NCBI GenBank assembly: GCA_965644265.1
Contig: OZ286461.1
Span: 95,666,001 to 95,730,000 of the forward strand
Direction of reading: 5' to 3'
Source of the DNA: Glycera tridactyla
Lineage: Eukaryota
DNA length: 64,000 nt
In this document: positions 3,701-64,000 of the stretch, piece after piece
Layout of the letters: the number at the start of each line of letters is the position of its first letter
How positions within the stretch are numbered: the stretch's first letter is position 1
Program-made: the position numbers and the translations under genes
The notes under the pieces: generated by a model
Seen by the model: only the letters and a program-made list of their open reading frames with translations
Told to the model about the DNA's origin: nothing
The model's database searches: none

Positions 3701-3800
3701 CTTTGAAGAGGATACCTCATCATTCAATGCATTGCAAATCTGCCACCATTATTGGCAAATATTTTTATGTGAGACAGATGAGATATGACGGCGCCACTCA

Positions 3801-3852
3801 ATGTGAAACCAGCGTGAAATTGACATATTATGCATTCTCTGGTGAAATTTAC
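3801..3852. repeat. Dispersed repeat fragment; second copy at about 49120-49170
   Basis: tgaaaccagcgtgaaattga.atatt..gcat....ggtgaaat.taca at both sites. Confidence 0.55.
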
Positions 3853-4244
3853 AAGGGGCCCTGGTTGAGATTAGATATTTAGTACTTGAAGATGTCAACA
3901 AAACTTGTTACTGAGTCTCATTTCAGTCCAACGAACATATGCTATGCTCGAGCGAAAAACGTACCCGCCACGATCTAATATGCTAGACTTTAGTGATGTA
4001 GTCATTCTGAGCTCCACACTTTTTTCTCTTGTTCATTGAGCAGCAAGATCAATTCATGGGGGAATCAGACATGACGAGTTTGTTTACAGCATTCACTTGA
4101 TGTGGCCTCTCAATTTGAAAATCAGTGATACAATATAAAATCTAAGCTATGTCTCAGATCATAAGGCAAGTCTTTTCCAAGAAAAAATATTGTTAAATAA
4201 TAGGTTAGAAATCAAATACTGATTAGCGTAACCAGAAGACTCAC

Positions 4245-4376
4245 CCTTATATTGGTGTTGGAGGCATCGAGGACGGACTGCAGAAGTGTGATTAGACCCG
4301 ACTGTGGATTTATGTAGAAGAATTCTGCAGCACTGCCATCTCCGGTGATACGATATTCAATCTCATTATTAGGAGC
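4245..4376 (-). CDS. Cadherin exon 49 (last found in window)
   Basis: APNNEIEYRITGDGSAAEFFYINPQSGLITLLQSVLDASNTNIR|gtgagt; no following exon found in 1-4244. Confidence 0.87.
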
Positions 4377-7300
4377 CTGCATAAACAAATATTCAATTCA
4401 CTTCACCACAATTCAAATGCCTGCGGTCAGTAAATGTAGGAAAAGCACTGTTCACAAACATCTGGGGAAGCAACATTCTATGCTGAGTATTATGGGTATT
4501 GTCTCTTGAGAACAGCCAGGATGTCAAGTAAAATCTCTAATGGCACATTTGTGCCAAATGATTCTCCACCACACTCAACCTGGGCCAAGTTCAGCTGTCC
4601 AACAGTTATTGACAATCTAAGTTTCAGCAGATGACCTTTCAACAAAACTGTCAACAATTTGCATGAATACCCCTGATACACCTCCCTCTGTCGATGATGT
4701 CCCCCTACCACTACCATATAGACAAAGCGGCTGCCATGATTGACAGATAGTCATCAATTGTACATGATCACTCTCAGCTAACAATTTTGGAGCAGCCGAA
4801 ACTGGCTCTGGGATACGAATCATATCCTTCCATTGACTACTTGTATCTAATCTTGGATGATAATCATGAATACAATTTCAATACTGAGATCCTGAGATCC
4901 AACAAAACTATTTTCATCCTCACCTCATCATCGTCATCAGTTGCTGAGAGCTGGACGATACTGCTTCCTGCAGGCAGGTTATCATTGATGGAGACACGTA
5001 AATTGCTCTGTGTGAAAGTCGGCTCATTCAAGTTTCTGATCACAGTTATATCGACCACTGTCGTACTTGTCCTTGGTGGAGTTCCACCATCCGCAGCTTT
5101 CACTCTCAACTAGAGGAAAATAAGAAAGATTCTTCAGCAACATTCATTCATGCAATGACATATCCTTGAAAAGTATTCCAGAGTGTCCCACATGAACATT
5201 TCCAGATGACAATGCCTCATGTCCCTAGTCCTCATCGCGGTGCATACATGATCTCACACTTTCATTCTCATGTAACCAAAAATGAAATCATAATCACTGA
5301 AAAAAATCACAGTATCTGATATCATTATACAGAAGTCATCTACATCATGTGACCCTTATTTCAATGTTTCAAACCTATCAACTGAGACTTAACAATCACA
5401 TTAAATATGATATATGGCCATCGGATGTCCATCTCAGCATGATCAACATAGATTTATTGTGTTGATGAATGGAAAATGAATACAAGTTTATTAAATCAGG
5501 TACTAGGTGCAAGACACAGATGTATCACATATGACTTTCAAAAGAAATAAACAGTTACCGAGTATTGTGTTTGTGAATCCGTCTCCAGCCGGGCATCATT
5601 CTTCACTCGAATTGATCCCTCTTCATTGATGTCAAAAAAACTGGGTCCTGCCCCATCACCAATCAGAGATAGATCAACCTCATTGAATGGAGACTGAAAT
5701 GAGAAAGTATTGCACAAAATCAAACTTTATCATCAATCAGCAGGTGAAATAGTTGAGAGTTTGTATAAATCTGCAACCTGCCAGATTGTTTAAAGGCTGC
5801 ATATGGAGTAATTGAAATAAGTCATGATTCCTGTGGATGTGATTTACTACCAGCATTACTTAGGCCAAACTTTGAACATTGTGCTCTGCTTTCATAATAT
5901 ATCCTCACAGCCATCTACCAATTACACAATGCACAGCCTGTATTTCACCTGATAGTAAGCAAACAAGAATACCCAAGTGATTGGCTGGAAAATAGACCCG
6001 TAGCCATCTTGGAGATATCTTCCAGCCATTGTATTTTTACCCTATATTTCCCACTTGCCTGCATTTTATATATCTCTCATGATAGACCACTCTTCAAAAT
6101 AGACTTGAAGCAATTCGCAAAAGAGAAATTCCACTGAAACGAGTCAAAAAATTACCTGAGCGTCATCATCTCTGAAGCCAACTCTGAGGACTTCACTTCC
6201 TGGTGACTGTGTTTCAGTAATGGTCTCCTCATAGTTAGTTTGAGTGAATGTTGGTGTGTTCTTATTGCGATCCACAGTCACTGTTACTGTGGCACTATTC
6301 TCAGATGAAAGTGAAGGATTGCCATTGTCCTCAGCACCGATGATGACCTACAAAAGAAAGATGATAGAATTACACTCTTATCATGACTTATTCTGATGAT
6401 GAAATGAGATTTTCCTGAGACCCAACTCAAATTCTTGAACGTCTCTTGAATAGGTGGAATAATGAGAAGCCTATCATCAATGGTTACATGTTTCTTGCTA
6501 CTGAAACTGTCTCCTACAGATACATCATCAAAATGATCAATTATATGCCTACAAAATGAAATCAACCAACAGACTGCTTTCTCTGAACTCTCATGATTTA
6601 ATCCCAAATGATGATTGCTTAAATTCATTGGTGCATATTATTTCTGAGGGAAACAGTCAACACTATGAAATAAGGTGGCTTTTTGAATAACGATTGCATG
6701 GTATACAAACCGTGTACATCTCGCTGGTATCGAGGGACAGTGACTGCTTCAACAAGATGACTCCAGTCTTTTCCTGAACCATGAAGTAAGATCGAGCCAG
6801 ATCATCGCCAGCCACCGAATACCGCACCTCATTGTCTGGAGTCTGGAGGATGAAACAAATACATAATAGGACAATTTTCATAATAGGGATGGAGTTCCGA
6901 GTCAAATTCTTCAGTCACACTCGAGATCAAGTATACATGATAGAGAATCTGGCTAATATTTCTCTGTTAGCCAAACTGAATAGCCTGCAGATCTTTGTTT
7001 TATGACCAAGCATCAGATAGGATAGGGATATACATTCTCAGCAGGTTTCAGTTACTGGTACATGTTTATGAAATTGTACAATGTACTATGATTTCTGATA
7101 GAAGAAGAAAAATATTGATCTATTTTATATAAGCTGGAAATCAAATGATACGACCAGTACACATGTACAATGTCAGATCCAGCACTGAAATATTTTAATA
7201 GTTGTCATTCACAAAGAAATACTCCAATTCAACTGGAATAGCTTGGGATAGGTGATTATGTTTAGTTACATGTATAGTGAATTTTGAGATATGATGCCTC

Positions 7301-10178
7301 AATGTCATGAAATTGTTGAATAAGAGAAAATCAACCAAAATATATACACAATTACCAAACTGCAATTGGTGTTCTTGCAGTCCTACAAAAATGTTGAAAC
7401 TTACCCTCAGATCAGCATCCTCAGCAGATACTGTTTGAATGGTTTGTCCAATAGAGACGGTCTCAAGGATTCGAGTTTGGTAGTTGACAGGTTGGAATCG
7501 AGGTTTGTTGAGGTTGCGGTTGACCGTGATACTAACCACAGTTACCGTGGACCTTGGTGGTGACCCACCATCCTTGACCTGCACTCGTACCTGCAAATAC
7601 CAGAACATATGTTGTCAAGTCTAACTTTGATCCTTCCTGAAGAATAGCACAATTCAACAATGATCCACAGATTGAATTGACGAGTACAAGAGCTGCATCG
7701 GAAGAAGTAGATCCGTATGATGAAGAAACATAATGGTGTTGATATCTGATGGTGTTCAGATGTGACTGGCATGTTCCACATGCAGCGCTGTCTTTCTTCA
7801 CCGGATCTGATTCTCAGCTCTACTTGGCATAAATGAATTTTGTCAAACTTAATCCAATCATCAAACCTGATTTGAGTTCGTTTGTTTGCTTTTGAAGAGA
7901 ATTTGGTCTCATTCTATTGCTTTGCACAGCAAAACTGCCAAACTCGATGAGCTTGACCTAAAAAATGCCTCTACTAACTCAATCAATCAATGTTAGGTGC
8001 TGCAATTGAAGAGATTGAAGCATGGAAATTCATGAAGCCTTACAGCAATGTGATATCTGAATAACACAAGCTTCTTGTAGAGATTGAATGATGATCTACT
8101 GAACGTAATCCAACAAGATCCTTCAAAGTGAGAAAAAATTAGGTTCTCAACAAATGTGTCTAACATTATGTGAATAGAACTGAGGGATTATGTTCAAATG
8201 GTATTGCCTTACCTTATAAACTCTTGTTCCATCACTTTCAAGGTTATTACTGACAGTAATTGCCCCATTATTCTTGTCAATTCTGAAGAAATTTGGAGCC
8301 GCATCATCACCGATGATTGAAAACTCCAATGAATTGAATGGTTCCTGCAATCAAAAGATGGCCATCATCATTATCATCAACAATTTTTCAAGCAGGAGTG
8401 ACCAAGAAAAAAACTCCTGTGAGTGACACCATTAGTAATTGACAAATAACTTTCTTCACATTTCTGTTAGGAAATCATGCATAATCTTCATCACATGCTA
8501 TGAGCTAGTATCCATGGTTTTCAGGCCTGTATCAAGCCATGAGATACTGTGAACCGTATCCCCAAGTTCATGCAATATCCCCTGCTTCGTATTTTCTTGT
8601 GAATTCTTGCTGTATTCAGACCGTTACTGACTGGCCAATCCTGATCTGGCCGGATGACTGAGGCTAACATGACTGGCTGTGTAGATGACACTCATTGAAG
8701 AGACAGGCCTTCGTATTCTCCTTGTCCGGACATTGATCATAGACATGGCGGTCCAAACTCGCAGGATACTGTGACCTCTCTCCTTGACCTGTGTGCAACT
8801 ATACATGTATCTTCCGATCTCTGGCTTTCTTCCGAAAGACACTTTCACTATCACTCTTCATTGATAACAAACTTTGGATATCTTTATGGCTCTAAAAGAC
8901 ATATGAATGGAAAATTACTGATTATACGAATCATGGGAATGTTTAATGTATGTCAACAATACAACTCCTGATGTATCTTCTCTGTACCTCGATGACAAAA
9001 CATGAGAATGATCATGAAGTACACACAAGCACATCATTCTACCCATCACAGTTCAGCAGATAGACTGCAGATTGTTCTGCTTCTCATAGCAACTGGAAAT
9101 GAGGTGACAAATTGCTTCATTTGTCTCAAATGTGACTAGCAAAAATACATGGGTAGAGCTGCACCCATTTCTAAAAGAGGTAAATAGAGGGAATATATAT
9201 TTGAAAAGGCAGATGGACATAAAATCTGAATGTTACACTCACTCCTACAATTACTCCTACAATAGCTTTGACATCCAGGATCTTTACTCTATGAGTACCG
9301 TGAAATTTCTACTTCAAGATGATAGGAAGGTTCCAGCCTGTTCCAGGACATACTCAAAGCAGATAAGACTGAACTCACTGCTGGATCTTGGTCTGTTGCG
9401 GAGACTGTGAGGACAGTCGATCCTGGTGCAGCGTTTTGGTCGATGGTCTCACTGTAGGACTCAACAAATTGTGGAGTATACTCATTGCGAACCACATTGA
9501 TGATGACAATATTAGGTCCCGTACGTTTCACTGGAGTTCCTTCATCAACAGCATACACATTCAACTGCAAAATGAGAACAGCAGCATATAACATTGATTC
9601 CTATATGAAACAAAAATAATTCATTTTGTGAGTTTGATCCATTTATTTGATGGATCTATTCATCTACTTCGAAGTCAGATTGAGATTGATTCATATTTTG
9701 AGTTGAAGATATTGACAGCATATTTCTGTATTAAATTACTAAAATGAGAAATCATTTAGCCAGTAAAATGAGATTTTTTCATTTATATTCCCACCCTCAA
9801 TTGCCGCAGTTGAATGATGCACTAGACACATTCAACACTATATGTCTGGCAATCCACCAAAAGATGCTAGGAGTCAAAGGATTTGTTGATGACATTTCAT
9901 ACACCCGTCTATCATCATTTAGTTGGGGAAACAGTAGCATACTTATCGAAAATAGGAGAGTTGCAATGCTACTCACTCTGTATTCACGAGTTCCATCTCC
10001 TAAGAGTGATCGTTTGAGAGAGATGGTTCCTGAATCACTGATGGCAAAGTAGGTATGGTCCAACTCATACGTCACAATGTTGTTAGGATTCTGAAAATGA
10101 GACAAGATAATCAAAAAATATAGCATGATATTACATGAACAAACATAGAAAGCACCATGTGTGTGTGTGTGTGTTTGT

Positions 10179-10230
<52 letters not shown>

Positions 10231-34200: not shown

Positions 34201-34410
34201 CGTGATCTTCCCCTTCTAGTTTCATGATCATGCTGGAGCTCATAATCAGCGATGTTTCTAGCCCAAAAATTGAGCGGGCCAATGGCCCGCTTTGCAGAAA
34301 AACAGTGGGCCATTTTCAGGATTCAATGGGCCATTTTCGAAATTTTGTGAGCCATTTCCTGGTTCGTGAAAACAACTGTTCATGACACACCCACTACCAA
34401 CCACCACGCA

Positions 34411-34490
<80 letters not shown>

Positions 34491-58400: not shown

Positions 58401-61400
58401 ATAATGAGAAAGAGAACTTCCCCTCTGACTGAGGAGAAAATCACATACAGGTTTTTTTTTGCAGAGACCACTTATCAGATTTCATGATTGTTCGAAAGCC
58501 CTAGACATTTCAAGAAATGCATTGTCAATTGTATGAAAAAATTAGGTTATTTTGATATTCAATATTTCCACAAATATGATGATATCAGCAGCTTCAATCA
58601 CTGCAGTCATCAGGAAATATCCAAATATTTCTCTCCGCCTTCCCAATGAATTTCATGACAAGGTCAAATAATGACAATAAGATTAAATATTTCTTTCACA
58701 TTGGTTTTATGAATGTATGTGTCCATGAAATTTTGCAGTTGGGGCAATAGGTCAAGAAATGGAACAGAAGATGATCAAGCAACAGCAAATATGCAGTAGC
58801 CCTTGGTTGAGAAAAGAATGCGGATGCGTTCTGAAAGCTTCCACGTCTGGATCTTTCCACTGTGACTACCATGAATTCTTACCTCCCCCCAAAAAGTTCC
58901 TGATTGTGATTGTTCATTATAAATTTTATTGAATGAAGCAGATTGATTCTATTGCGACCTTGCTAAACATGGCAAACAAACCAAGAAAACAAAACAGCTA
59001 TGACAGGCATCTGGGGCAGTGCTTTCACACAATGTTTGAAGTACTTACACGGCCATTTCGGCCAACAGCCTGTGGTAAAGAAAACAATCAAGTGCAGTTT
59101 CATCAACTGAAAGTGAACCCTGTGCTACACAAAAACTGTCATTGTGACCAAGTGTGACATCGATGAATATACTACTTCATTTGCCCACATGCTCATGCAT
59201 ACAGTGAAACCTGTGGAGAGACCACACAATGAGAAACCAACTACGAAGAGAACACTTTTTCAGGGCAGATATTCTCAACCGAGAGGCCGCATTTGTTGAC
59301 ATTTAGGGTAGTCACTGGTCACNNNNNNNNNNNNNNNNNNNNNNNNNNNNNNNNNNNNNNNNNNNNNNNNNNNNNNNNNNNNNNNNNNNNNNNNNNNNNN
59401 NNNNNNNNNNNNNNNNNNNNNNNNNNNNNNNNNNNNNNNNNNNNNNNNNNNNNNNNNNNNNNNNNNNNNNNNNNNNNNNNNNNNNNNNNNNNNNNNNNNN
59501 NNNNNNNNNNNNNNNNNNNNNNNNNNNNNNNNNNNNNNNNNAGAACTAGGTCACACATGCCATTACTCACTCGACCAGTGTTTCCTATAGCCTGCATTTA
59601 ACATTCATATTATTCAATACATCTCTGAAATAGTAATTTCAATACTTTCTGAATCACCATTTGGGACATGAAACCTTTCAAAAATTTACCCCTAAATATT
59701 CAGCCATATCAAATAATTGCATCTAGGTCTTATTCCAATTCATTATGGAAAACTTCCAAGTTTACATTCTTACAATCTATATGCATGACTTAGAAATATA
59801 TTGCTGAATATGATCAACTGTTGAAATGCCATTTCACCAGCACTTCATGTAGTCAGTAGGCTACTAGCAGTCAAGATAAAGGCTCAATCATTGTTTCAAA
59901 TATTTCCTAATTGTGACAGATTTCAACCAGATATAAAAGTTAGCAATAATATGAACTGTGCTTTATTTTTCACAAGATGAACATCTGAAGACTGGTTGAT
60001 GGCCAAAAACTCATTTAATCTCACCGTTAGATTATCAAACTCACAGAACTGGTAAATGACTGAATATCATGATGATGGAGAATATTCTCATTGCATTAGA
60101 TTTTACCATGGCACCTACAGAAAATGATTTGTCAAAGAAAAGAGCATTGTGAACCATCTCAGAAAATGGTAATTTCAACAAGAGGTGGACAGAATCCATT
60201 CCTAATAGGACCAGGAGAACATCATAAATGAATCAAGTGCTTTATTACAAGTGACTTGGTTCCCTCAGAAACAGTCGTAGCTTATCTCAGATTTTATAGC
60301 ACACATATCTAATTTGCATCACAAAACCAGGTTTATGAAATGGGTAGCATCATTCTTAGGGGATTGCCCTTCAACATTTAAGTGACAGGGATGACTTACA
60401 AGTTACTAGTTTATACTAGAATATGATTGAAGAGGGTTTCAAATGAGCATGCTTTCTCTTGTGTTCAACGATATATTAATTGATGAATCAGTAGATCAAC
60501 TTACAATCATTTAAGTTTCTCTTTCTAACAATGTACAAATTATTATATTTTATGGTAATGGGCAGGCTTTGAGACAGCTGGTATCTGGATTCAATAAACC
60601 TTGAAAAGTGACTTAATGTCTTAAATACTATATATCTATCATTTGCAAACTGCAGTCCTTGAGAAACTTTGATTGATAAGCCCAATTCTGAAAAAGAAAA
60701 CTCAGTCAATTTGGAAAACAATGTCGATGGAGTATAGTGAAATTCAATACTTACAACAGAATTACTTGGGACTGATGCATAGTACTGGGGGTCAATGCAT
60801 CCCCCAAGATATGTATAACAACCGTTATATTTGAACGTGGGCCCCTGATCATCTCCGTCTGTAATCGTCACCCTCATTGTTGTGTATGATGTCCTCCGTG
60901 GAAATTCATAACTGTCATCCTATAAAGAGAATCAGAGAAACATGATGTGGGAACAAATTTCAGTATTGCAAGCATATGCAAATGATAAAGCCTCTCATGG
61001 ACCCAAGCTGCATACTCTCCAAATCAAGTGATTGGATCGGAGGAAGCATCCCCTTCCAAAGCTGCCATCAGACCGTCCAACAGATCATCATTTTCATATT
61101 CACCCATTTTTACAAGTTGAATATCACCTCTGCGAGATCACAGATTTAGCTTGCTCTACAATGATGTTTGGTTAATGGAATACCTGCTACCGCAGAGATG
61201 GCCAGGATTGCCTGAACACAATTTTCTTCATGTTTTATGTCATGGAAATTTACTGAATAACTACTTCCTGACAGACCAGCCGATTGGAGTCTGGCACTTG
61301 ATGCATTACACTCGACTTGACCTCACATGACCTGTGAAGGCACTGCTCAAGCCTTCACATCTGAGCCCTCCACTAATTCAACTCTCGGGAAAATATGAAG

Positions 61401-63670
61401 ACTATCCAACCCTCAAGGCCTATGTGATCCAGGGGGGGGGGGACTAAAAGGGCAACATTCCACTTTGCATACAACCAAAAGGTGACAAATTAACACATCT
61501 CAGGTCAAGCCCATAGATTCTCTATACAGTTCCCATAGAAGTCACTTACATTGGCGGAGATGTTGAGTGTGTAATATGTGCGGCCAGCCTCTTGAAGAGA
61601 TTCATAATCCAACTGTGATGACACACTGATCTCACCCAACCTTGGAAGCACGATACGAAACTTGGTCGAACCATCAAACTGGAAAAATAAAACATCACAC
61701 TTGGAAACAAAAATTGAATCTTAACAAGGCACTTGAGGAGTAATTCGCACACCTGAACATTTCAAACATTTCCACACATCATAGTCCATGTTTGGTTGAT
61801 TTACAGGATTATTTCGGTTCAAGATGATAGTTGTTGGGGTGGAGTGCATGCATGCATATGTATGTAATCATGAGCCTGAATGATCAAGATCTGTGCATGC
61901 GACACTGGAGCCAGATCATGATTTCATTCCACTGGCCGCCATTACTGACATGCCACATGAAAAAGGTTAACCTAAATACACACTGACATTTGACCTAGCT
62001 GATGACCTTCATAGTAAGTCAGTTTTCCTGCATGTCCCTCTCTCTTCTTGGGACCATTAAGTACTGGACCACATGCCTGGAGGCCACATTTGAGACATCA
62101 CCTTGAGGGGATCATCAGTCATGCTGGATAGTGCCCCTGTAGTCATCCAAATGTCTTGGATATCATGACATTGTGGCCAGTGATTTATCATGTATTATTG
62201 CTCAGATAAAAGCTGTCTTTTGATGTGGATTATTACATATGTATGTGTACAAATAGTCATTTTCACTAGCTACATTCCTTGTTATGAAACCTGATCTGCT
62301 GATACAGTGAAACCTGTCACGAGCGACCCCCGACGAGCGACCACCTCTCTTGAATGACCATTTTTCCTGCCAAAATTCCAAATACTTCTAAAATGACCTC
62401 TTACAAGCGACCAGCTCTCTAACGCGACCAGCGACCGGCATGAATAGTACTGATTACCTGCGACGAACGACCACTCGAGGCGAATAGATGTATTGATTAG
62501 GGTTGTGATGGCCGATGATCCCGTGATTGGACAAACGACATCTACTCGCCACTGCTCACTCATGCTTCACTGAATAAGGACAAAGCCTATTGTCCGGTCG
62601 TTCGAGCCCGATGGACTAATCTCTCACAAAGACATACCGGGGGACATGCTGATACTGTGATAACAGGTCTACAGAACGATTTACTCGCGAAATGTCCATT
62701 GTTTATTGCGTTGAAAGCAGCAGTTTCACCGAACACATGACGAAACTCACGGGCCCAAAAGGAGAATGAAGAAAAATGGCGGGATTCAAAATCGTCTCCA
62801 CCGGCTTCAGAAACACATATTTCTTATTAATAAAGACATTTCAAAGGACAGTTTATGATAATCTCAATTTCTATGATGATATTTCTTTGCGTATTCAACG
62901 TTTCGATCACAGATTCGTTATTTTTAATGCTGTTGGGAACCGGGGATACCCGCATAAATTATGTTGATGAGGGCTTCCCTTGAAGAACATGATGGTTTCA
63001 CTCAGTAAGTTTGATGCGGCCGAAAGCGCACAAATTTTACTGTTTCTGGCGAATAATGGCGGTATTTCCTCATGGAGATGTTGGCATTTGTCAACAGTGG
63101 AGTGTTTTACGCCTCTTTCGTGCCATTTGCGTGTGTTTTGCAAAATATCCGGCAAATGTCGATGTTAATTCCGCAAAAGGTTAGTTGTTGTTGTTGGGCG
63201 ATATTGGGAGTATTTGGTATGGATACATGTGTTCGCGGCTGGGTCCAGCTGATCGAACCTGCGACGAACGACCACCTGTCTTGAACGACCACTTTTTCTT
63301 GCTTTTTAGGGTGGTCGCTCGTCACAGGTTTTACTGCACATCAGCACAGAGATTCACTGACTCCAATCGAAAATCATGACCCTCTCAACTGTTTGTGGCT
63401 GTTCATCTGTGTATTGTGTGTATCATGTCTGGATGTGTGTGCACACGCATGTGTATCAGCATGTATTCATCCATAAATCAATATGTTTGCACAGATAAAA
63501 AGATGCACATAATATACAAAAAATAGCAAATGATCACTGGATAAGAGTCAGATACTTACAACATTTGGCTCAGGGGATGGAACAATGTTGAAATCGATAT
63601 CTCGATGACGACCAGCATCAAGATCCGTCGCTAACAATCCTTGGAAGATCACTAACCCTACAGGAGTATT
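4245..63670 (-). CDS. Giant multi-exon cadherin-repeat protein, partial at both ends (49 exons, about 2760 aa, about 26 EC domains); Fat-like in size, N-terminal part PCDH15/Cad99C-like
   Basis: All 49 exons have AG/GT boundaries, compatible phases and cadherin motifs (DxD, LDYE/LDRE, AxDxGxP, DxNDNxP or RNxxxP). Summed length is 8280 nt with no stop. No signal peptide, TM or cytoplasmic exon lies in the window. Confidence 0.93.
4924..5109 (-). CDS. Cadherin exon 48
   Basis: LRVKAADGGTPPRTSTTVVDITVIRNLNEPTF...LSATDDDDE. Confidence 0.9.
5559..5693 (-). CDS. Cadherin exon 47
   Basis: SPFNEVDLSLIGDGAGPSFFDINEEGSIRVKNDARLETDSQTQYS. Confidence 0.88.
6156..6347 (-). CDS. Cadherin exon 46
   Basis: VIIGAEDNGNPSLSSENSATVTVTVDRNKNTPTF...VGFRDDDAQ. 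Confidence 0.89.
6711..6842 (-). CDS. Cadherin exon 45
   Basis: TPDNEVRYSVAGDDLARSYFMVQEKTGVILLKQSLSLDTSEMYT. Confidence 0.88.
7405..7590 (-). CDS. Cadherin exon 44
   Basis: VRVQVKDGGSPPRSTVTVVSITVNRNLNKPRF...VSAEDADLR. Confidence 0.9.
8213..8344 (-). CDS. Cadherin exon 43
   Basis: EPFNSLEFSIIGDDAAPNFFRIDKNNGAITVSNNLESDGTRVYK. Confidence 0.9.
9379..9564 (-). CDS. Cadherin exon 42
   Basis: LNVYAVDEGTPVKRTGPNIVIINVVRNEYTPQF...VSATDQDPA. Confidence 0.9.
9977..10090 (-). CDS. Cadherin exon 41
   Basis: NPNNIVTYELDHTYFAISDSGTISLKRSLLGDGTREYR. Confidence 0.87.
10158..10229. repeat. (TG)n microsatellite
   Basis: Direct observation. Confidence 0.95.
10366..10551 (-). CDS. Cadherin exon 40
   Basis: VRVQVRDGGNPAKQSTAILNVNVLRNLNAPQF...VRATDADEK. 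Confidence 0.9.
10865..11191 (-). CDS. Cadherin exon 39 (fused double exon)
   Basis: IRVEAVDMGNPPKRSPSPANIIINIKRNQNEPRF...ARDADTTEPFNQLFYQIIGDDSATNYF...EIDYQ. Confidence 0.9.
11728..11859 (-). CDS. Cadherin exon 38
   Basis: APNNLIRYSIKTDSPSHVYYMIDPVTGLITLKKSLLEDGSQRHE. Confidence 0.88.
12493..12678 (-). CDS. Cadherin exon 37
   Basis: LKVLAIDGGTPPKSATATVSITVNRNLNEPRF...VTATDQDIV. Confidence 0.9.
13273..13404 (-). CDS. Cadherin exon 36
   Basis: APFNTIRYAIIGDESAPTYFSISEDNGEIRVKTSLQTDDETFYV. Confidence 0.9.
14073..14270 (-). CDS. Cadherin exon 35
   Basis: IKVTAFDLGVPTPCYANRNVTIRVTVDRNQYAPTF...VQASDRDNK. Confidence 0.9.
14592..14729 (-). CDS. Cadherin exon 34
   Basis: APFNVVRYQIVGTPLSEEYFYINEMSGAIFQRKPVQLEPTQATLYE. 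Confidence 0.89.
15233..15418 (-). CDS. Cadherin exon 33
   Basis: VRVRAYDNGVPPKQNVTTVNVDVNRNLRCPSW...VKAEDGDVQ. Confidence 0.89.
16117..16248 (-). CDS. Cadherin exon 32
   Basis: DTYNSVAFEIIGDGAGATYFRINPQSGLLTVGADLTTDTLTEYL. Confidence 0.88.
16693..16884 (-). CDS. Cadherin exon 31
   Basis: LLVRARDGGFPALYSEQQATITVNVIRNNHYPIF...LSATDADPE. Confidence 0.9.
17449..17586 (-). CDS. Cadherin exon 30
   Basis: VPYNRVSYELAGDAQAANFFLIGATNGEIKLKASLLQDPLKSEVYT. Confidence 0.89.
18277..18462 (-). CDS. Cadherin exon 29
   Basis: IRVQASDGDSPPCQVTTIITVTVNRNLNRPVF...VEATDADLR. Confidence 0.9.
19035..19166 (-). CDS. Cadherin exon 28
   Basis: PPYNQVSYAIIGDDNAPTYFEINAEDGNVRIKRSLNDDSTEVYK. Confidence 0.89.
19298..19579. 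mobile_element. MITE-like element with an inverted repeat of about 31-36 bp
   Basis: tgttcagttacgcaaacaggagctaacgttc versus the reverse complement of gaatgttagcttctgtttgtgtaactgaaca (28/31); CAG...CTG ends; no TSD seen. Confidence 0.55.
19880..20223 (-). mobile_element. tRNA-related SINE-like retroposon with an 11-bp TSD and partial tandem duplication
   Basis: cagaatatagt at 19869-19879 and 20224-20234; B-box-like GGTTCAAATCC on the minus strand; about 91-bp segment duplicated at 19881 and 20132 (251-bp period). Confidence 0.65.
20490..20681 (-). CDS. Cadherin exon 27
   Basis: LTIQARDGGDPALNSNQNARVTINVARNLQCPRF...VQARDSDQK. Confidence 0.9.
24640..24684 (-). CDS. Orphan or alternative cadherin exon inside the intron between exons 26 and 27
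   Basis: ttttcag|LTVEARDHGYPMLST|gtaagt; phase 0, paralogous to the start of exon 27 (LTIQARDGGDP). Confidence 0.5.
25871..25987 (-). CDS. Cadherin exon 26
   Basis: VTYYLIGDSLAQQFFMVDEDTGEVSVRKDLATDTNTRYV. Confidence 0.88.
26664..26996 (-). CDS. Cadherin exon 25 (fused double exon, shifted donor)
   Basis: DQFGVVEYTLIGDDSATTYF...AYDNGTPAKS...RNLNAPRF...EATDSDEQEPFNL|gtgagc. Confidence 0.9.
27194..27710 (-). mobile_element. Non-autonomous Helentron-like element (HINE/DINE-1-type architecture)
   Basis: On the minus strand: TTTT-CATGCCCCGC 5' end, (CCCA/CACA)-like microsatellite, about 2.3 internal tandem units of about 145 bp, inverted GCGGGGCAT, short ACTCA-C-TGAGT hairpin, CTAGTT end. Confidence 0.65.
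28000..28320 (-). CDS. Cadherin exon 24 (fused double exon)
   Basis: APNNDFIFEATGDETALGFFEV...AHDLGTPSLSSDDAMINIAVIRNDNAPRF...RATDADPS. Confidence 0.9.
28741..28926 (-). CDS. Cadherin exon 23
   Basis: VRVVAFDNGNPPRSATAIVYVTVLRNFYAPTW...VTANDRDAA. Confidence 0.88.
29523..29654 (-). CDS. Cadherin exon 22
   Basis: EDFRMVNYGIIGDDSAPTYFRINDETGQITTVTSLTSDTNELYR. Confidence 0.88.
29740..30094. mobile_element. Two adjacent degenerate MITE remnants of related type
   Basis: gagtgtaacctg...gattcaactg|ta (29740-29913), then repeated taagcagccac motifs with an inverted gtggctgctta (29953-30094). Confidence 0.5.
30242..30436 (-). CDS. Cadherin exon 21
   Basis: PVISARDRGLPVSKQATNRASVTVNVVRNENAPIF...VQAQDSDTA. 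Confidence 0.88.
30956..31093 (-). CDS. Cadherin exon 20
   Basis: TPHNQIIYSMSGDALAMEYFMVDEDTGYLSLKKSVALDPSRNTRYQ. Confidence 0.88.
31934..32113 (-). CDS. Cadherin exon 19
   Basis: VRILATDGGDRSAEGLVTITVNRNLHAPSF...VTAIDNDIQ. Confidence 0.88.
32521..32652 (-). CDS. Cadherin exon 18
   Basis: ELFSRISFSLSGDGKATRFFKVHPETGLVSIARNLQEDSDLVYV. Confidence 0.87.
33222..33407 (-). CDS. Cadherin exon 17 (first RNxxxP linker)
   Basis: ITVAAKDMGSPVLSSTSQVSVNIVRNNFAPVF...VTVRDDDTD. Confidence 0.9.
33850..34110 (-). CDS. Cadherin exon 16
   Basis: DENDFTPAFEKAVY...IRETAPIG...ALDQDPEGPNSDIRY...PLDEDRETSRYT. Confidence 0.9.
34409..34488. repeat. (CA)n microsatellite
   Basis: Direct observation. Confidence 0.95.
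35577..35789 (-). CDS. Cadherin exon 15
   Basis: AVDMDQTKSIAYVITRGDTGRFRLDEVSGRLTTIQPLDYERQREY...IAITVM. Confidence 0.9.
36022..36185. mobile_element. TA-flanked MITE, same TIR family
   Basis: TA|AAGTGAAACCTG...TAGGTTTCACTG|TA; internal gagaccacc motifs. Confidence 0.7.
36273..36516 (-). CDS. Cadherin exon 14
   Basis: (S)FFVIDAESGQIRTSAPLDYE...INVEDMEDMIPIF...VPENEQGYLITTVE. Confidence 0.9.
37396..39290 (-). CDS. LINE ORF2 3' part: reverse transcriptase and C-terminal domain
   Basis: NYRPISILP, QSGFRP, FLDFKKAFDTVNH, GVPQGSTLGP, YADDT, FKYLGV, SFSYFGPKQWNSLP; frame stays open back to the insertion junction at 39290. Confidence 0.92.
39660..41534 (+). CDS. Crypton-type DUF3504 tyrosine recombinase (KIAA1958/KCTD1-related family), intronless
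   Basis: EYEPVTL, KQGKG, FGRRG (R), SKTRTG (K), CPVRAY, TNHSARK (HxxR), VTGHK (H), SLNNY (Y); first ATG at 39660, while the ORF track starts at GTG 39624. Confidence 0.88.
   Translation: MLPLLKVGEKVKYKGCLAVVEKIESPLGFREFTIRLESGIVRICARYLLEKLEYSDNDQPGVDLDSVAEPSSEVSEVEMDSEDDELLVIAATQAESEQVDIQVESPESNTESTSKCDQPHRFVDMTVPVDDFIESNQNKQTVRKTRGHIELLKSYFLTIGESREVEDIPPLELRDLLSKFFLCVRTKKGAEYEPVTLRSMLGSFNRYLCQKDYSESLIEGSTFKKMREALKSKQDLKKQGKGNGPMQAGELTDAEIDQLYEKKQLGCHSPTSLLNTMWFMMCVHFGRRGGCEEHRNISWGDVTLSYDRVKNKECLKFQERTSKTRTGADPRDMLRVTPTVWERPDEPDRCPVRAYKLYAKKRPATYSNPTDPFYIGVNTADKCPPLNSRWFISQPVGRHKLASIMKNMVKEADMESDKRLTNHSARKYLVQKLSASNVPPNLIMQVTGHKNVNSLNNYSKLTGHQHHQISSILGDTHNSEVARPPQPGCSSWIEPGNNPPNALHGSHHHAGTGSHHHVGTGSQVLNHFVPRPASAQNDMLPPQSLALPTNQVISSSQMCQTSTVAVTDSRGEMSNCDGSMGSMFRGCNIQKVVVNYNTYNNMPRQYNRVKRLVYSDSSESSQSQ
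41833..41991. mobile_element. 159-bp inverted-repeat element (MITE-like)
   Basis: Perfect 16-bp inverted repeat GGGCCCATTCGACTGG / CCAGTCGAATGGGCCC; no clear TSD. Confidence 0.6.
42177..42353. mobile_element. Tc1/mariner-pogo-type MITE nested in the YR element
   Basis: TA|CAGTGAAACCTG...CAGGTTTCACTG|TA. Confidence 0.8.
42520..43480. repeat. 210-bp tandem repeat array, about 4.6 copies
   Basis: Anchor gaagtgattcc at 42592, 42802, 43012, 43222 and 43432; internal units near-identical. Confidence 0.95.
44320..44465. repeat. About 146-bp subterminal palindrome
   Basis: Perfect 38-bp outer arms at 44320-44357 and 44428-44465, plus an inner stem of about 22 bp. Confidence 0.93.
44475..45540 (-). 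CDS. LINE ORF2 5' part: 2A-like peptide plus APE endonuclease (interrupted)
   Basis: LLLLAGDVEMNPGP, HQNICS, ISETWL, LGDINID, TRPTR, LIDII, GLSDHDMV, PWLTDE. Confidence 0.9.
45703..45986. repeat. 142-bp tandem duplication in the LINE inter-ORF spacer
   Basis: catggtacaacagcaggtattgaagaa at 45703 and catggcacaacagcaggtattgaagaa at 45845. Confidence 0.85.
46167..47207 (-). CDS. LINE ORF1p (coiled coil plus RRM/CTD, L1/Transposase_22-like)
   Basis: EQMNRGNMLIFDGIKE, DIDFARRMGK...KTRPILVNF, IFIREFLTPARASL...W.QDGEI; open 346 aa. Confidence 0.82.
   Translation of the reverse strand: MEGALSMRASRFQPWVPDMFNTEPASTKRKALNTSLISDPNSPDKFKKLAISTPVQSTPAARYLEPDFQSFIGGSFIENHSSINETMMQQQTGEPQDPATEQYIRMLSDQNVRQMLKGIFEESQAVLTSRVENLSTNNVIQDKRLSELEFRMDSCEQMNRGNMLIFDGIKEELNEDLASGIIRFAQQPLQVMVTNNDIDFARRMGKIEPNKTRPILVNFNRLSIRQLIFQSRMKLAKLDLKIFIREFLTPARASLMFEARKYRRAGLLASQWSQDGEIKVAIQKGGQPITVKSFEHLQAIVNTSPPRDIMPVGPADPIASQQQMLKSLSQSVQNMEAHFNASKMTQ
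47236..47576. repeat. Five dispersed copies of an about 22-bp motif in the LINE 5' UTR
   Basis: c(c)gactttccagtgtttcac(g) variants at 47236, 47404, 47451, 47494 and 47555. Confidence 0.75.
47670..48450. promoter_or_regulatory. CpG-enriched cluster of CCAAT boxes plus an E-box upstream of the LINE
   Basis: GCCAATC at about 47672, 47721, 48019, 48069 and 48439; CACGTG at about 47765. Confidence 0.3.
48729..48787 (-). CDS. Cadherin exon 13
   Basis: ATDVDQGDNGHVLYAVPDN(S); ends phase 2, matching exon 14 across the 12.2-kb intron. Confidence 0.87.
49410..49538 (-). CDS. Cadherin exon 12
   Basis: SATTTLSIVVTDINDNSPVFTTPPDVVFTVRENQNNEFIGTVQ. Confidence 0.9.
49881..50054 (-). CDS. Cadherin exon 11
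   Basis: ATDPEQDPLQFFITDGNPDDVFAVGQNTGIITIANYLDRETRDHYTLKLKATDQDSSR. Confidence 0.9.
50721..50850 (-). CDS. Cadherin exon 10
   Basis: Starts phase 2; (R)ESLTIVNVIVVLDQNLGPIIPAPQYSLTLSEGVLLNSDVFTVP. Confidence 0.85.
51448..51644 (-). CDS. Cadherin exon 9
   Basis: VEATDADSGSYGQVTYSI...VDRDETYLITVEARDGAPPSSQ(R); ends phase 2. Confidence 0.9.
51873..52017. mobile_element. TA-flanked MITE, same TIR family
   Basis: TA|CAATGAAACCTGTCT...AGACAGGTTTTACTG|TA. Confidence 0.75.
52349..52504 (-). CDS. Cadherin exon 8
   Basis: VIVTETGVDNPRSSSADISVKVQDMNDNSPEFPPSGYIVTLKEGEGRRPVVQ. Confidence 0.9.
52914..53048 (-). CDS. Cadherin exon 7
   Basis: TEDDEETQFTYRVDGTGIFGVTTDGFVVLNVNDLDYETTKEVNFK. Confidence 0.88.
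54056..54259 (-). CDS. Cadherin exon 6
   Basis: AEEVSEIRRFTTSTLTVHITSTNEYPPEISS...YENSG...LIPSDPDQ. Confidence 0.87.
55044..55156 (-). CDS. Cadherin exon 5
   Basis: Starts phase 1; (G)TPDNYDEYFSIDSNSGLVLQHQGIDRQQYREIVMVVK. Confidence 0.87.
55690..56070. repeat. Degenerate relative of the 27.2-kb element
   Basis: Shares tttttgcactcagtga, aaattcaagatggc and aaaacataatg motifs in the same order. Confidence 0.4.
56101..56188 (-). CDS. Cadherin exon 4
   Basis: VGQLTIGPEPIKAEDRDTLNYPIQYSLLG(G); ends phase 1 at gtgagt. Confidence 0.85.
59202..59290. mobile_element. Left part of a CAGTGAAACCTG-family MITE
   Basis: TA|CAGTGAAACCTGT with gagaccac motifs; right end not seen (N gap follows). Confidence 0.5.
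60755..60919 (-). CDS. Cadherin exon 3
   Basis: DDSYEFPRRTSYTTMRVTITDGDDQGPTFKYNGCYTYLGGCIDPQYYASVPSNSV; resembles the PCDH15 DGDDLGPMF..C..C..Y linker. Confidence 0.88.
61550..61678 (-). CDS. Cadherin exon 2
   Basis: ttccag|...|gtaagt; FDGSTKFRIVLPRLGEISVSSQLDYESLQEAGRTYYTLNISAN. Confidence 0.88.
62305..63336. mobile_element. 1032-bp non-autonomous Tc1/mariner-pogo-type element
   Basis: TA|CAGTGAAACCTGTCACGAGCGACC ... GGTCGCTCGTCACAGGTTTTACTG|CA; about 27-bp TIR, repeated acgaccac motifs, no transposase ORF. Confidence 0.75.
63560..63670 (-). CDS. Cadherin exon 1 (in-window numbering)
   Basis: tag|...|gtaagt; NTPVGLVIFQGLLATDLDAGRHRDIDFNIVPSPEPNV. Confidence 0.85.
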
Positions 63671-64000
63671 CTATAATGGGAAAATGACAGCAAATTTTAG
63701 TCTCATCTGGTAGAACATGCATGATTTCCTGAGGTTATGTAAAGAGGGGGAGAAGCCACTTGCAGTGGTGGATCCAGGATCTTCAGAGTGAGGGGGTGAA
63801 GTCTCACATGGGGGTGTGGGGCAGGCCAACAAGCAGCCCTCCCTTCCTGAGTGGATGCTCAGATCTGGGGTTGCATAAGAAGGGGGCACAAGCTGGGTGC
63901 CTCTCCCCCTCCTATGACCACCATGTTAGCAAAAGACAAATATCTAAATACACAAAGCAGACAATCTGGTGGATCTTTCTGGTGTATGCTTGTAGTAGAT

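What the first reader, a model, noticed from the sequence alone, without database searches (positions are those of the whole stretch)
4245..63670. A PCDH15/Cad99C-like cadherin with a massively extended ectodomain
Seen: at least 26 EC domains and still no membrane-proximal or TM exon. The first domains carry DGDDQGPTF..GC....GC..P.YYA, PEPIKAEDRDTLNYPIQYS, GTPDNYDEYFSID and AEEVSEIRRFTTSTL. From memory these match the EC2-EC4 region of PCDH15 and Cad99C. Known: PCDH15 and Cad99C have 11 EC repeats and act in tip links and microvilli. Inference: a lineage-specific giant version (more than twice the length) that could form long inter-microvillar or ciliary links; automated pipelines would probably mislabel it Fat-like.
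Basis: partly seen in the sequence, partly recalled or inferred. Interest (0 to 1): 0.7.

Follow-up and report, generated by a model that had tools for sequence, protein, structure and literature searches.

The report
Giant protocadherin-15-like cadherin, front part
This stretch holds the first 26 repeats of one very long, transcribed cell-surface cadherin of a lophotrochozoan invertebrate: its tip is the counterpart of protocadherin-15/Cad99C (the hair-cell tip-link and microvillus cadherin), but after the ninth repeat it runs into a long stalk built with unusual arginine-asparagine joints instead of calcium joints.

Summary
On the minus strand, 49 exons (63670 down to 4245) all have AG/GT borders. 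Joined locally, they give an open frame of 2,756 codons with no stop, covering 26 cadherin repeats (EC2 to EC27). No membrane-proximal or membrane-spanning exon lies in the window. All four assembly gaps lie in introns, and spliced RNA contigs from four runs bridge the critical gap (33692-33822).

The head (EC2-EC9) belongs to the PCDH15/Cad99C clade:
- It aligns in one piece with fish PCDH15 (32.5% identity, 311 bits), against 195 bits or less for CELSR, CDH23 and Fat.
- In the tree the clade has SH-aLRT 100 and follows the species tree.
- AU tests reject grouping with Fat or CDH23.

Eighteen "RN" joints follow, starting exactly at the conserved calcium-free 9/10 hinge of PCDH15/Cad99C. The same head-to-array junction occurs in a nemertean genome and in four mollusc gene models. 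NCBI names the heads "cadherin-99C-like" and the array pieces "Fat-like" or "cadherin-23-like".

The scan had already flagged the array on neighbouring DNA; the identity of the head is new.

Still open: the far (membrane) end, whether a canonical 11-repeat orthologue also exists, and the function.

The parts
63560..63670 (-). Exon E1: start of EC2 (first cadherin exon in the window; EC1 lies beyond 64000)
   Evidence: AG/GT borders; best HSP on fish PCDH15 179-215 and Tubulanus Cad99C-like 187-211
61550..61678 (-). Exon E2: EC2 core
   Evidence: tblastn with P0016 222-261, 48% identity; AG/GT
60758..60919 (-). Exon E3: end of EC2, DGDD 2/3 joint, two-cysteine loop at start of EC3
   Evidence: All PDB matches at E<=0.001 are PCDH15, residues 222-265; P0016 274-333
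56101..56179 (-). Exon E4: EC3 (ends in phase 1)
   Evidence: GTGAGT donor after one base of a Gly codon; P0016 323-349
55044..55156 (-). Exon E5: EC3 (GTPDNY motif)
   Evidence: Fish PCDH15 348-384, copepod PCDH15 242-278; splice borders
54056..54259 (-). Exon E6: end of EC3, non-canonical 3/4 joint, start of EC4
   Evidence: Query of the library-wide HMMER search; named hits are 'cadherin-99C-like' of Tubulanus and Gigantopelta at their residues 387-460
52914..53048 (-). Exon E7: EC4
   Evidence: P0016 460-505; AG/GT
52349..52504 (-). Exon E8: end of EC4, canonical DMNDNSP 4/5 joint, start of EC5
   Evidence: P0016 475-557
51448..51644 (-). Exon E9: EC5 (ends in phase 2)
   Evidence: Pfam Cadherin 3e-12; P0016 555-623; donor
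50721..50850 (-). Exon E10: non-canonical 5/6 joint (first conserved PCDH15/Cad99C hinge), start of EC6
   Evidence: Fish PCDH15 617-648; hinge 5/6 described in PMC2171266
49881..50054 (-). Exon E11: EC6
   Evidence: Pfam Cadherin 2.7e-11; fish PCDH15 659-711, 43% identity
49410..49538 (-). Exon E12: canonical DINDNSP 6/7 joint, start of EC7; donor 6 nt before gap 49246-49403
   Evidence: Fish PCDH15 717-759, 44%; GTAACC donor read directly
48729..48787 (-). Exon E13: EC7 (ends in phase 2)
   Evidence: Splice borders; colinear with Haliotis P0033
36273..36516 (-). Exon E14: end of EC7, 7/8 joint, start of EC8
   Evidence: RNA contig pieces 36272-36519 spliced to 35788; fish PCDH15 782-850, 44%
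35577..35789 (-). Exon E15: EC8
   Evidence: RNA contigs, CT..AC joints on both sides; Pfam Cadherin 3.6e-13
33850..34110 (-). Exon E16: canonical DENDFTP 8/9 joint and EC9
   Evidence: RNA contigs; single-stretch PDB matches to PCDH15 chains 6c13, 4xhz, 6eet and 5kj4 (54.7 bits to 6c13), which I read from memory of those entries as the EC8/9 joint plus EC9, against about 21 bits for any single CELSR1 repeat
33222..33407 (-). Exon B1: end of EC9, first RN joint (at the 9/10 hinge), start of EC10
   Evidence: Spliced to 33850 across gap 33692-33822 in four runs; fish PCDH15 1029-1065
32521..32652 (-). Exon A1: EC10 core
   Evidence: RNA contigs; AG/GT, phase 0
31934..32113 (-). Exon B2: RN joint 10/11
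   Evidence: RNA contigs
30956..31093 (-). Exon A2: EC11 core
   Evidence: AG/GT, phase 0
30242..30436 (-). Exon B3: RN joint
29523..29654 (-). Exon A3
28741..28926 (-). Exon B4: RN joint
28000..28320 (-). Fused exon A4+B5: EC core plus RN joint
   Evidence: Pfam Cadherin 5.8e-12; PDB hits generic (CELSR1, protocadherins), not PCDH15-specific
26664..26996 (-). Fused exon A5+B6 (runs five codons into the next repeat)
   Evidence: Pfam Cadherin 3.5e-11; borders
25871..25987 (-). Exon A6
24547..24684 (-). Doubtful exon 'B7?': 46-codon B-type half-domain without an RN joint and without a partner A exon; probably a relic, left out of the 49-exon model
   Evidence: AG/GT and phase 0, but breaks the A/B alternation; no A-type ORF between 24547 and 20681
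20490..20681 (-). Exon B8: RN joint
19035..19166 (-). Exon A8
18277..18462 (-). Exon B9: RN joint
17449..17586 (-). Exon A9
16693..16884 (-). Exon B10: RN joint; gap 16529-16657 lies in the intron after it
16117..16248 (-). Exon A10
15233..15418 (-). Exon B11: RN joint
14592..14729 (-). Exon A11
14073..14270 (-). Exon B12: RN joint
13273..13404 (-). Exon A12
12493..12678 (-). Exon B13: RN joint
11728..11859 (-). Exon A13
10865..11191 (-). Fused exon B14+A14
10366..10551 (-). Exon B15: RN joint
9977..10090 (-). Exon A15 (short)
9379..9564 (-). Exon B16: RN joint
8213..8344 (-). Exon A16
7405..7590 (-). Exon B17: RN joint
6711..6842 (-). Exon A17
6156..6347 (-). Exon B18: RN joint
5559..5693 (-). 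Exon A18
4924..5109 (-). Exon B19: RN joint
4245..4376 (-). Exon A19: core of EC27, last cadherin exon seen in the window
   Evidence: no further cadherin-like ORF in 1-4244
36517..48728 (-). 12.2-kb intron between E13 and E14, filled with mobile elements; no cadherin exon in it
   Evidence: ORF scan; Pfam RVT_1, endonuclease and Phage_integrase on its long ORFs; transcript contig length fits the absence of hidden exons

Best explanation
The window holds the 5' part of one very large, transcribed cadherin gene on the minus strand: 49 exons and 2,756 codons, covering repeats EC2 to EC27.

Its head, repeats 1-9, is the lophotrochozoan member of the PCDH15/Cad99C lineage. The head keeps the lineage's marks:
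- the DGDD joint and two-cysteine loop between EC2 and EC3;
- a non-canonical 5/6 joint;
- a non-canonical 9/10 joint.

PCDH15 and Cad99C have a calcium-free hinge at 9/10, followed by two more repeats and the membrane. In this gene the 9/10 position instead opens a long run of repeats. Each is joined by an 'x-R-N-x-N-x-P-x-F' motif that lacks both aspartates of the calcium motif DxNDN. The repeats are coded by alternating phase-0 half-domain exons.

Shown here: the gene structure; the splicing of head exons onto array exons; the family placement of the head; and the same architecture in a nemertean and in molluscs.

Inferred: the protein is an apical surface filament. A PCDH15-type tip would bind a partner (by analogy a CDH23-like cadherin, or itself). 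That tip would sit on a long spacer that depends little on calcium, about 117 nm for the 26 repeats seen here at 4.5 nm each, and several times that if earlier scan notes of about 76 repeats are right. It would link or space microvilli, cilia or the cuticle of epithelial or sensory cells.
For: Gene model: all 49 exons have AG/GT borders and give one open frame of 8,268 nt. It has 18 RN joints and 4 canonical joints.

One transcript: contigs of four runs skip the introns at CT..AC borders and join 36519-36273 | 35789-35577 | 34110-33850 | 33407-33222 | 32652-32521 | 32113-31934. Single contigs (X3 record 9, X1 record 1) cross the head/array junction and the assembly gap.

Head is PCDH15/Cad99C:
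- Exon E3's only PDB matches at E<=0.001 are PCDH15, at the 2/3 joint.
- Nemertean orthologue P0016 aligns to PCDH15 chain 11iy_C in one 611-residue stretch (218 bits, total E 7e-69), ahead of all other cadherins.
- Exon E16 matches chains of the later part of PCDH15 (6c13, 4xhz, 6eet, 5kj4) in single stretches, 54.7 bits to 6c13; I read these as the 8/9 joint plus EC9.
- The local EC2-EC9 model aligns end to end with fish PCDH15 179-1058 (32.5%, 311 bits). CELSR, CDH23, Fat and ft score 195 bits or less.
- The tree gives (vertebrate PCDH15,(arthropod,(lophotrochozoan + window))) with SH-aLRT 100/97/89.
- AU tests reject a clade with Fat/ft (p 2e-66) or with CDH23 (p 1e-11).
- NCBI calls the orthologues 'cadherin-99C-like'.

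Conserved junction: the first RN joint follows EC9 in the gap-free Tubulanus genome locus L001 and in Haliotis P0033, Bulinus P0036 and Potamilus P0035. Gigantopelta P0037 also joins a Cad99C-like head to an RN array, though that model passes from EC4 straight into the array.

Hinges 5/6 and 9/10 are conserved features of Cad99C/PCDH15 (PMC2171266).
Against: - The membrane end (EC10-11-type repeats, MAD12/PF23206, TM, PDZ-binding tail) was not seen in the window or in any orthologue fragment. A PCDH15-type anchor is therefore unproven.
- EC1 is outside the window. Pfam's PCDH15 EC1 model (PF18432) does not recognise EC1 of the orthologues.
- Exon-level searches of the EC7-EC8 exons do not discriminate between cadherin families.
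- The comparison panel lacked Dachsous and used partial outgroup proteins.
- The runs are only guessed to be RNA, although intron-skipping contigs can hardly be anything else.
- RNA was laid on 31850-36600 only. The rest of the model rests on splice signals, the open frame, orthologue colinearity and contig lengths.
- The function is inference only.
Confidence: 0.78

Rival explanations
1. The head is a lophotrochozoan paralogue of PCDH15/Cad99C, formed by duplication and then fused to or extended by an RN array. A normal 11-repeat orthologue with MAD12 and TM would exist elsewhere in these genomes.
For: Gigantopelta has two 'cadherin-99C-like' heads on one chromosome (P0023, P0037), so heads do duplicate. 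My searches could not see proteins longer than 1.75 times the query, and the MAD12 search was swamped by fish PCDH15, so absence was not shown. Pfam's PCDH15 EC1 model does not hit the lophotrochozoan EC1.
Against: The tree places the lophotrochozoan heads where the species tree predicts for an orthologue, sister to arthropods and then vertebrates. Every lophotrochozoan head whose model or locus is long enough runs into RN joints (window, L001, P0033, P0035, P0036, P0037). The library-wide HMMER search with exon E6 had no length limit. It found no longer lophotrochozoan protein carrying this region.
Confidence: 0.17
2. Two neighbouring genes, or a scaffolding misjoin at the gap 33692-33822, imitate one giant gene.
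For: The change of repeat type falls right next to an assembly gap. NCBI pipelines split the homologous loci into several gene models.
Against: Spliced contigs in four runs join 33850 to 33407 with canonical borders, and single contigs run from EC7 exons into array exons. The junction completes EC9 in frame. The same order is found without any gap in Tubulanus L001 and inside single mollusc gene models.
Confidence: 0.02
3. The gene is really a Fat, Dachsous or CDH23-type giant cadherin, and the likeness of its head to PCDH15 is generic cadherin similarity.
For: Array exons hit CELSR, Fat and protocadherins better than PCDH15. NCBI labels array pieces Fat-like or cadherin-23-like.
Against: The AU tests reject head + Fat/ft and head + CDH23. 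The in-register alignment to PCDH15 scores over 110 bits more than any alignment to Fat, CDH23 or CELSR. The PCDH15-specific 2/3 joint and Cys loop are present. Dachsous-1 chains (PDB 'Protocadherin-16') score 86 bits against 236 for PCDH15. The RN joints are unlike the canonical joints of Fat, Dachsous and CDH23.
Confidence: 0.03

Closest known systems
Protocadherin-15 (PCDH15), vertebrate tip-link cadherin
   Same: The head aligns in register from EC2 to the end of EC9 (32.5% identity over 874 positions). The DGDD 2/3 joint with a two-cysteine loop is shared. The 5/6 and 9/10 joints are non-canonical in both. The two group together in the tree.
   Different: PCDH15 has 11 repeats, then MAD12, TM and a tail. 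This gene has at least 27 repeats with no end in sight. After EC9 it carries RN joints in place of PCDH15's EC10-EC11. EC1 and the anchor were not seen.
Cad99C (Drosophila), the microvillus-length cadherin and PCDH15 orthologue
   Same: Same clade: arthropod PCDH15-like proteins are the sister group of the lophotrochozoan heads. NCBI names the orthologous heads 'cadherin-99C-like'. Identity is about as high as the 30% that supported Cad99C/PCDH15 orthology, against 24% for the runner-up Fat3 (PMC2171266).
   Different: Cad99C has 11 cadherin domains and a PDZ-binding C-terminus. No true Drosophila Cad99C sequence was in my panel, only a copepod 'PCDH15' and an unnamed beetle protein.
Cadherin-23, Fat and Dachsous (long cadherins of 27-34 repeats)
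   Same: Very long ectodomains made of many cadherin repeats. Automated names of the array fragments point to them.
   Different: Their heads do not group with this one. As far as I know their joints are mostly canonical DxNDN calcium sites, whereas all 18 array joints here are RN type.
RN/arginine-joint giant cadherin arrays of molluscs, and of this genome's neighbouring windows in earlier scan notes
   Same: Same joint motif and same half-domain organisation: Babylonia P0269 has 13 RN joints, Haliotis P0270 has 9, Saccostrea P0271 has 10. Earlier notes s1-340422, s1-333383 and s1-340411 describe the continuation of this gene.
   Different: Those fragments and notes cover only the stalk. Here the stalk is tied to a PCDH15/Cad99C-type head. 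I found no paper describing either.

Membership tests
PCDH15/Cad99C | Ectodomain best and colinearly similar to PCDH15/Cad99C, above all other cadherins | tested here: met
   311 bits and 32.5% over EC2-EC9 to fish PCDH15, against 195 or less for others. One 611-residue stretch of P0016 on PDB PCDH15. Clade SH-aLRT 100. AU tests against Fat and CDH23.
PCDH15/Cad99C | DGDD-type 2/3 joint followed by a two-cysteine loop at the start of EC3 | tested here: met
   Exon 60758-60919. The only PDB matches at E<=0.001 are PCDH15 residues 222-265. The feature is also present in all orthologues.
PCDH15/Cad99C | No calcium consensus at joints 5/6 and 9/10 (PMC2171266) | tested here: met
   The 5/6 joint in exon 50721-50850 lacks DxNDN. 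The 9/10 joint in exon 33222-33407 is RN type and aligns with the vertebrate and arthropod non-canonical 9/10 joints.
PCDH15/Cad99C | Eleven cadherin repeats | tested here: not met
   26 repeats (EC2-EC27) in the window alone.
PCDH15/Cad99C | PCDH15-type EC1 (Pfam ECD, PF18432) | tested here: inconclusive
   EC1 is outside the window. PF18432 hits fish PCDH15 but not EC1 of four lophotrochozoan orthologues at E up to 1. The phmmer alignment to PCDH15 does cover the second half of EC1.
PCDH15/Cad99C | Membrane-adjacent MAD12 domain (PF23206), single TM, C-terminal PDZ-binding motif | not testable with these tools
   The 3' end of the gene lies far outside the window. No orthologue fragment found carries it.
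Fat / Dachsous / CDH23 | Head repeats group with the family | tested here: not met
   Tree and AU tests. PDB scores to Fat4, Dachsous-1 (listed in PDB as Protocadherin-16) and CDH23 are 82-97 bits, against 236 for PCDH15. No Dachsous sequence was in the tree.
Fat / Dachsous / CDH23 | Canonical calcium joints along most of the rod (from general knowledge) | tested here: not met
   18 of 18 array joints are RN type, with both Asp of DxNDN absent.
RN-joint giant cadherins of Lophotrochozoa (defined only by this scan) | Tandem repeats joined by R-N-x-N-x-P-x-F and coded by alternating phase-0 half-domain exons, with relatives in molluscs | tested here: met
   for the window. for the mollusc fragments.

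The most novel reading that the evidence does not exclude
Annelids, nemerteans and molluscs have no ordinary 11-repeat PCDH15/Cad99C. In this reading their single orthologue of the tip-link/microvillus cadherin is a protein of about 76 repeats and about 8,000 residues. The conserved calcium-free 9/10 hinge was multiplied into a calcium-independent arginine-joint stalk, inserted between the ancestral EC1-9 head and an ancestral EC10-11/MAD12/TM anchor. That would give a surface link several hundred nanometres long.
Probability: 0.35. Interest if true: 0.8.

Novelty: new variant of a known kind. Interest (0 to 1): 0.62.

Why it matters
PCDH15/Cad99C is a textbook case of a cadherin whose length and hinge positions are thought to be tuned to its job in tip links and microvilli. 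It has kept 11 repeats from flies to humans. A whole superphylum in which the same head sits on a stalk several times longer, built with joints that cannot bind calcium in the usual way, would have three consequences:
- The head and the stalk of this family could be seen to evolve separately.
- It would be a natural experiment on how rod length and calcium-free joints affect a force-bearing or spacing link.
- It would correct current annotation, which cuts the gene into pieces named Cad99C-like, Fat-like and cadherin-23-like. Comparative studies that use 'Pcdh15' as a marker in annelids (for example Platynereis epidermis and ciliary bands, PMC5913682 and PMC8445025) may be looking at this kind of gene.

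Tried and rejected
1. Library-wide HMMER search with exon E6. It found only 26 hits, mostly exon-sized fragments. Two named proteins gave the lead, but no full-length giant appeared.

2. Word search with the MAD12 region of fish PCDH15. The 120 rows shown were all fish PCDH15, so it says nothing about invertebrates.

3. Word search with the array part of Gigantopelta P0037. It found array fragments only, with no TM and no PF23206.

4. Following the Haliotis rubra locus. The array, with near-identical duplicated exons, runs on to the end of the DNA fetched, and the end of the gene was not reached. Walking along the Tubulanus locus was given up, because each step needs the exact sequence of a gene model.

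5. Exon-level PDB searches of the EC7/EC8 exons and of an array exon. The hits were generic cadherins. Total scores favour chains with many repeats, so I compared single-stretch scores instead.

6. Pfam ECD on the orthologues' EC1. No hit.

7. Origin of the array. HMMs built from the window's A and B exons do not pick out one PCDH15 repeat. The only stand-out is 42 bits on what the alignment indicates is the EC9 core of a beetle PCDH15-like protein, and the copepod also has Arg at the aligned 9/10 position. This is a lead, not a result.

8. Literature searches for a giant Cad99C/PCDH15-like cadherin in lophotrochozoans found nothing.

Nothing was found.
Full report
**What is there.** So the gene reads from high to low coordinates. 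Stop-to-stop frames of the minus strand show a long series of cadherin-like pieces, and Pfam's Cadherin model hits those tested.

I mapped 49 exons between 63670 and 4245, using three guides: alignment of the repeated exon types, the splice signals and colinearity with orthologues. Every exon has an AG acceptor and a GT donor. Joined in a local script, they give 8,268 nt = 2,756 codons without a stop.

The first 16 exons code for EC2 to EC9. Three of their introns (E4/E5, E9/E10, E13/E14) split codons. The other 33 exons are phase-0 'half-domain' exons of two alternating kinds. 'A' exons code the repeat core. 'B' exons code the end of one repeat, the joint and the start of the next. Three exons are fusions of an A and a B.

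No membrane-proximal or TM exon was seen, and nothing cadherin-like lies in 1-4244 or 63671-64000. EC1 and the signal peptide must lie beyond the window's end.

**The gaps.** The program asked that continuity across the N runs be tested first.

- Gap 33692-33822 sits exactly where the repeat type changes, so it mattered most. The exon before it ends at 33850 with a GTGAGT donor.
- Four public runs hold about 21-24% of the sampled words of 31850-36600, close to my estimate of the exon share. Their contigs lie on the exons only.
- Those contigs skip the introns at CT..AC borders (GT..AG on the gene's strand). They join 36519-36273, 35789-35577, 34110-33850, 33407-33222, 32652-32521 and 32113-31934. 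Single contigs cross the gap (X3 record 9, X1 record 1).
- The runs are only guessed to be RNA, but intron-skipping contigs are spliced RNA for practical purposes.
- One contig (X4 record 14) continues 2,520 nt upstream of 36519. The head exons upstream in the window sum to 1,778 nt, which leaves about 740 nt. That fits EC1, the signal peptide and a 5' UTR, so no hidden exons need be assumed. Another contig (X4 record 13, 6,250 nt) continues 5,768 nt downstream, slightly more than the 5,274 nt of the remaining array exons. These two are consistency checks, not mappings.
- Gap 49246-49403 begins six bases after an intact donor.
- Gaps 59323-59541 and 16529-16657 lie between exons that follow each other with no residues missing against orthologues, or without breaking the A/B alternation.

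**What the head is.**

- Exon E3 (60758-60919) matches, at E<=0.001, only PCDH15 chains in the PDB, at the EC2/EC3 joint with its DGDD motif and cysteine loop.
- A search of 1.8 billion representative proteins with exon E6 gave 26 hits. The only two named ones are 'cadherin-99C-like' of the nemertean Tubulanus polymorphus (P0016) and the gastropod Gigantopelta aegis (P0023). Both match at the position expected for EC3/EC4.
- The window's head exons are colinear with both proteins.
- P0016 aligns with PCDH15 chain 11iy_C in a single 611-residue stretch (218 bits). This is the best PDB match and runs in register from EC1 to EC6.
- Exon E16 matches chains of the later part of PCDH15 (6c13, 4xhz, 6eet, 5kj4) in single stretches, 54.7 bits to 6c13, against about 21 bits for any one CELSR1 repeat. 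From memory of which repeats those chains hold, I read the matched positions as the EC8/EC9 joint plus EC9.
- A word search with P0023 brought more mollusc 'cadherin-99C-like' models, then PCDH15 of fishes, birds and mammals at 28-31% identity and about 85% coverage. Fat, CDH23 and CELSR fragments came in at about 24%.
- In a local script the window's EC2-EC9 model aligns end to end with fish PCDH15 179-1058 (32.5%, 311 bits). A bird PCDH15 gives 296 bits, a copepod 'PCDH15' 262 and an unnamed beetle protein 407. The best non-family proteins reach 195. This margin resembles the one used to call Cad99C the orthologue of PCDH15: 30% identity, against 24% for Fat3 (PMC2171266).
- A maximum-likelihood tree of 25 rows gives (vertebrate PCDH15, (arthropod, (lophotrochozoan heads + window))), with SH-aLRT 100, 97 and 89. 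That is the species tree.
- Forcing the heads together with Fat/ft or with CDH23 costs 154 and 158 log-likelihood units (AU p 2e-66 and 1e-11). The CELSR test did not finish in time.

Limits of these tests: outgroup segments were picked by best local alignment; several are partial proteins; Dachsous was not in the tree; and the tree search was the quick kind. Dachsous-1 chains (listed in the PDB as Protocadherin-16) score 86 bits, against 236 for PCDH15, with P0016 as query.

**Where the head ends and the stalk begins.** The joints read as follows:

| Joint | Motif | Type |
|---|---|---|
| 2/3 | DGDDQGP | PCDH15-like |
| 3/4 | - | non-canonical |
| 4/5 | DMNDNSP | canonical |
| 5/6 | - | non-canonical |
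| 6/7 | DINDNSP | canonical |
| 7/8 | DMEDMIP | near-canonical |
| 8/9 | DENDFTP | canonical |
| 9/10 onward (18 joints) | x-R-N-x-N-x-P-x-F/W | RN type |

D'Alterio et al. noted that Cad99C and PCDH15 share missing calcium sites at exactly 5/6 and 9/10. So the stalk starts at the second conserved hinge.

Aligned from the P-x-F end, the RN motif keeps the two Asn of DxNDN, loses both Asp, and puts Arg at the 'x' after the first Asp. This agrees with earlier scan notes on neighbouring windows, which I only partly re-tested.

Array exons are generic in database searches: CELSR, protocadherins and Fat score better than PCDH15. HMMs made from them do not point to one PCDH15 repeat as the source. 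The only hints are weak: 42 bits on a beetle segment that the alignment places in the EC9 core, and an Arg at the aligned 9/10 position in the copepod.

**Conservation.** In the Tubulanus genome locus L001, which has no gaps and short introns, the same exons follow each other on one strand: head, EC7, EC8, a canonical 8/9 joint, EC9, then RN joints. NCBI cuts this into models of 746, 400 and 438+ residues.

Single gene models of Haliotis cracherodii (P0033), Bulinus (P0036) and Potamilus (P0035) run from the head through EC9 into RN joints. A second Gigantopelta model (P0037) joins a head to an RN array.

Array fragments of Babylonia, Haliotis rubra, Saccostrea, Littorina, Solemya and Mya carry 5-13 RN joints and no canonical ones. 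NCBI names five of them 'protocadherin Fat 1-like', 'Fat 4-like', 'FAT4-like', 'cadherin-23-like' or 'cadherin-related tumor suppressor-like'; the Solemya fragment is only 'hypothetical protein'. The giant form belongs to a wide group of animals, not to one species.

**What stays open.**

- I could not reach the membrane end. Whether the anchor is PCDH15-like (MAD12, TM, PDZ-binding end) is therefore unknown.
- I could not exclude a separate canonical PCDH15/Cad99C in these genomes. The tree topology, and the fact that all six sufficiently long lophotrochozoan heads run into RN joints, speak for orthology at about 4:1.
- Pfam's PCDH15 EC1 model does not see the orthologues' EC1.
- One 46-codon piece (24547-24684) has good splice signals and phase but breaks the A/B alternation and lacks a joint. 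I treat it as a relic.
- Earlier scan notes say the genome is an annelid's and the gene has about 76-79 repeats. I did not verify either. In my tree the window is nearest to the nemertean.

**Mechanism.** Shown here: one transcript, a PCDH15/Cad99C-type head with both family hinges, and a stalk of RN-jointed repeats. Inferred: a long apical filament whose tip binds a partner as PCDH15 does. The stalk would place that tip 100 nm or more from the membrane and would depend little on calcium at its joints.

Platynereis papers use a gene called Pcdh15 as a marker of epidermal cells and ciliary bands (PMC5913682 and PMC8445025). Whether that is this gene's orthologue is not known.

**Novelty.** I found no paper describing a giant PCDH15/Cad99C-like cadherin or RN joints. 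The scan had already reported the stalk on neighbouring DNA. What this report adds is the identity of the head, the exact junction at the 9/10 hinge, and its conservation.

Noticed in passing
window 37399-47207 (intron between E13 and E14): Pieces of a non-LTR retrotransposon lie on the minus strand: reverse transcriptase at 37399-39240 (RVT_1, 3e-41), endonuclease at 44470-45540, and a 346-codon ORF with no Pfam hit at 46170-47207. They are interrupted by a plus-strand element coding a tyrosine recombinase (39624-41531; DUF3504 plus Phage_integrase). That element also holds a 210-bp tandem repeat of 4.6 copies at 42520-43484.
   Followed up: partly
window 24547-24684: A 46-codon B-type half-domain has an AG acceptor, a GT donor and phase 0, but no RN joint and no partner A exon within the 5.2-kb intron. 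It is a possible relic of a lost repeat or a rare cassette exon.
   Followed up: partly
window 34235-35029 and 35984-36301: Intronic stretches are covered by many short contigs at very high depth, up to about 6,800 against 4-10 on the cadherin exons, with many loose ends. They are probably repeats transcribed elsewhere in the genome.
   Followed up: no
L001 10001-29525 (Tubulanus polymorphus, OZ123229.1): NCBI annotation cuts what looks like one colinear cadherin gene into consecutive same-strand models of 746, 400 and 438+ residues. The 746-residue model ends in read-through intron sequence.
   Followed up: partly
P0023 and P0037 (Gigantopelta aegis, same 81.6-Mb contig): Two different 'cadherin-99C-like' heads (34% identical) lie on one chromosome. 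The second model passes from EC4 directly into RN-jointed repeats, so either there is a paralogue with a shorter head or the model skips exons.
   Followed up: no
L002 44433-44726, 58138-58353, 66624-66875 (Haliotis rubra QXJH01000468.1): Three near-identical copies of one B-type exon lie 8-14 kb apart. This points to recent segmental duplication of blocks of several repeats inside a mollusc RN array.
   Followed up: no
P0043 715-758 and P0056 about 960 (arthropod PCDH15-like proteins): The HMM of the window's array core exons scores 42 bits on a segment of a beetle PCDH15-like protein that the alignment places in its EC9 core. The next best score anywhere in the panel is 19. The copepod protein has Arg at the position aligned with the RN arginine in the 9/10 joint. 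This is a lead that the stalk arose by multiplying the EC9/hinge unit.
   Followed up: partly
window 34405-34496; also around 10100-10290, 18550-19060, 53270-53400: A (CA)n microsatellite (46 copies), and further CA/TG-rich tracts seen as His-Thr or Cys-Val runs in translated introns.
   Followed up: no
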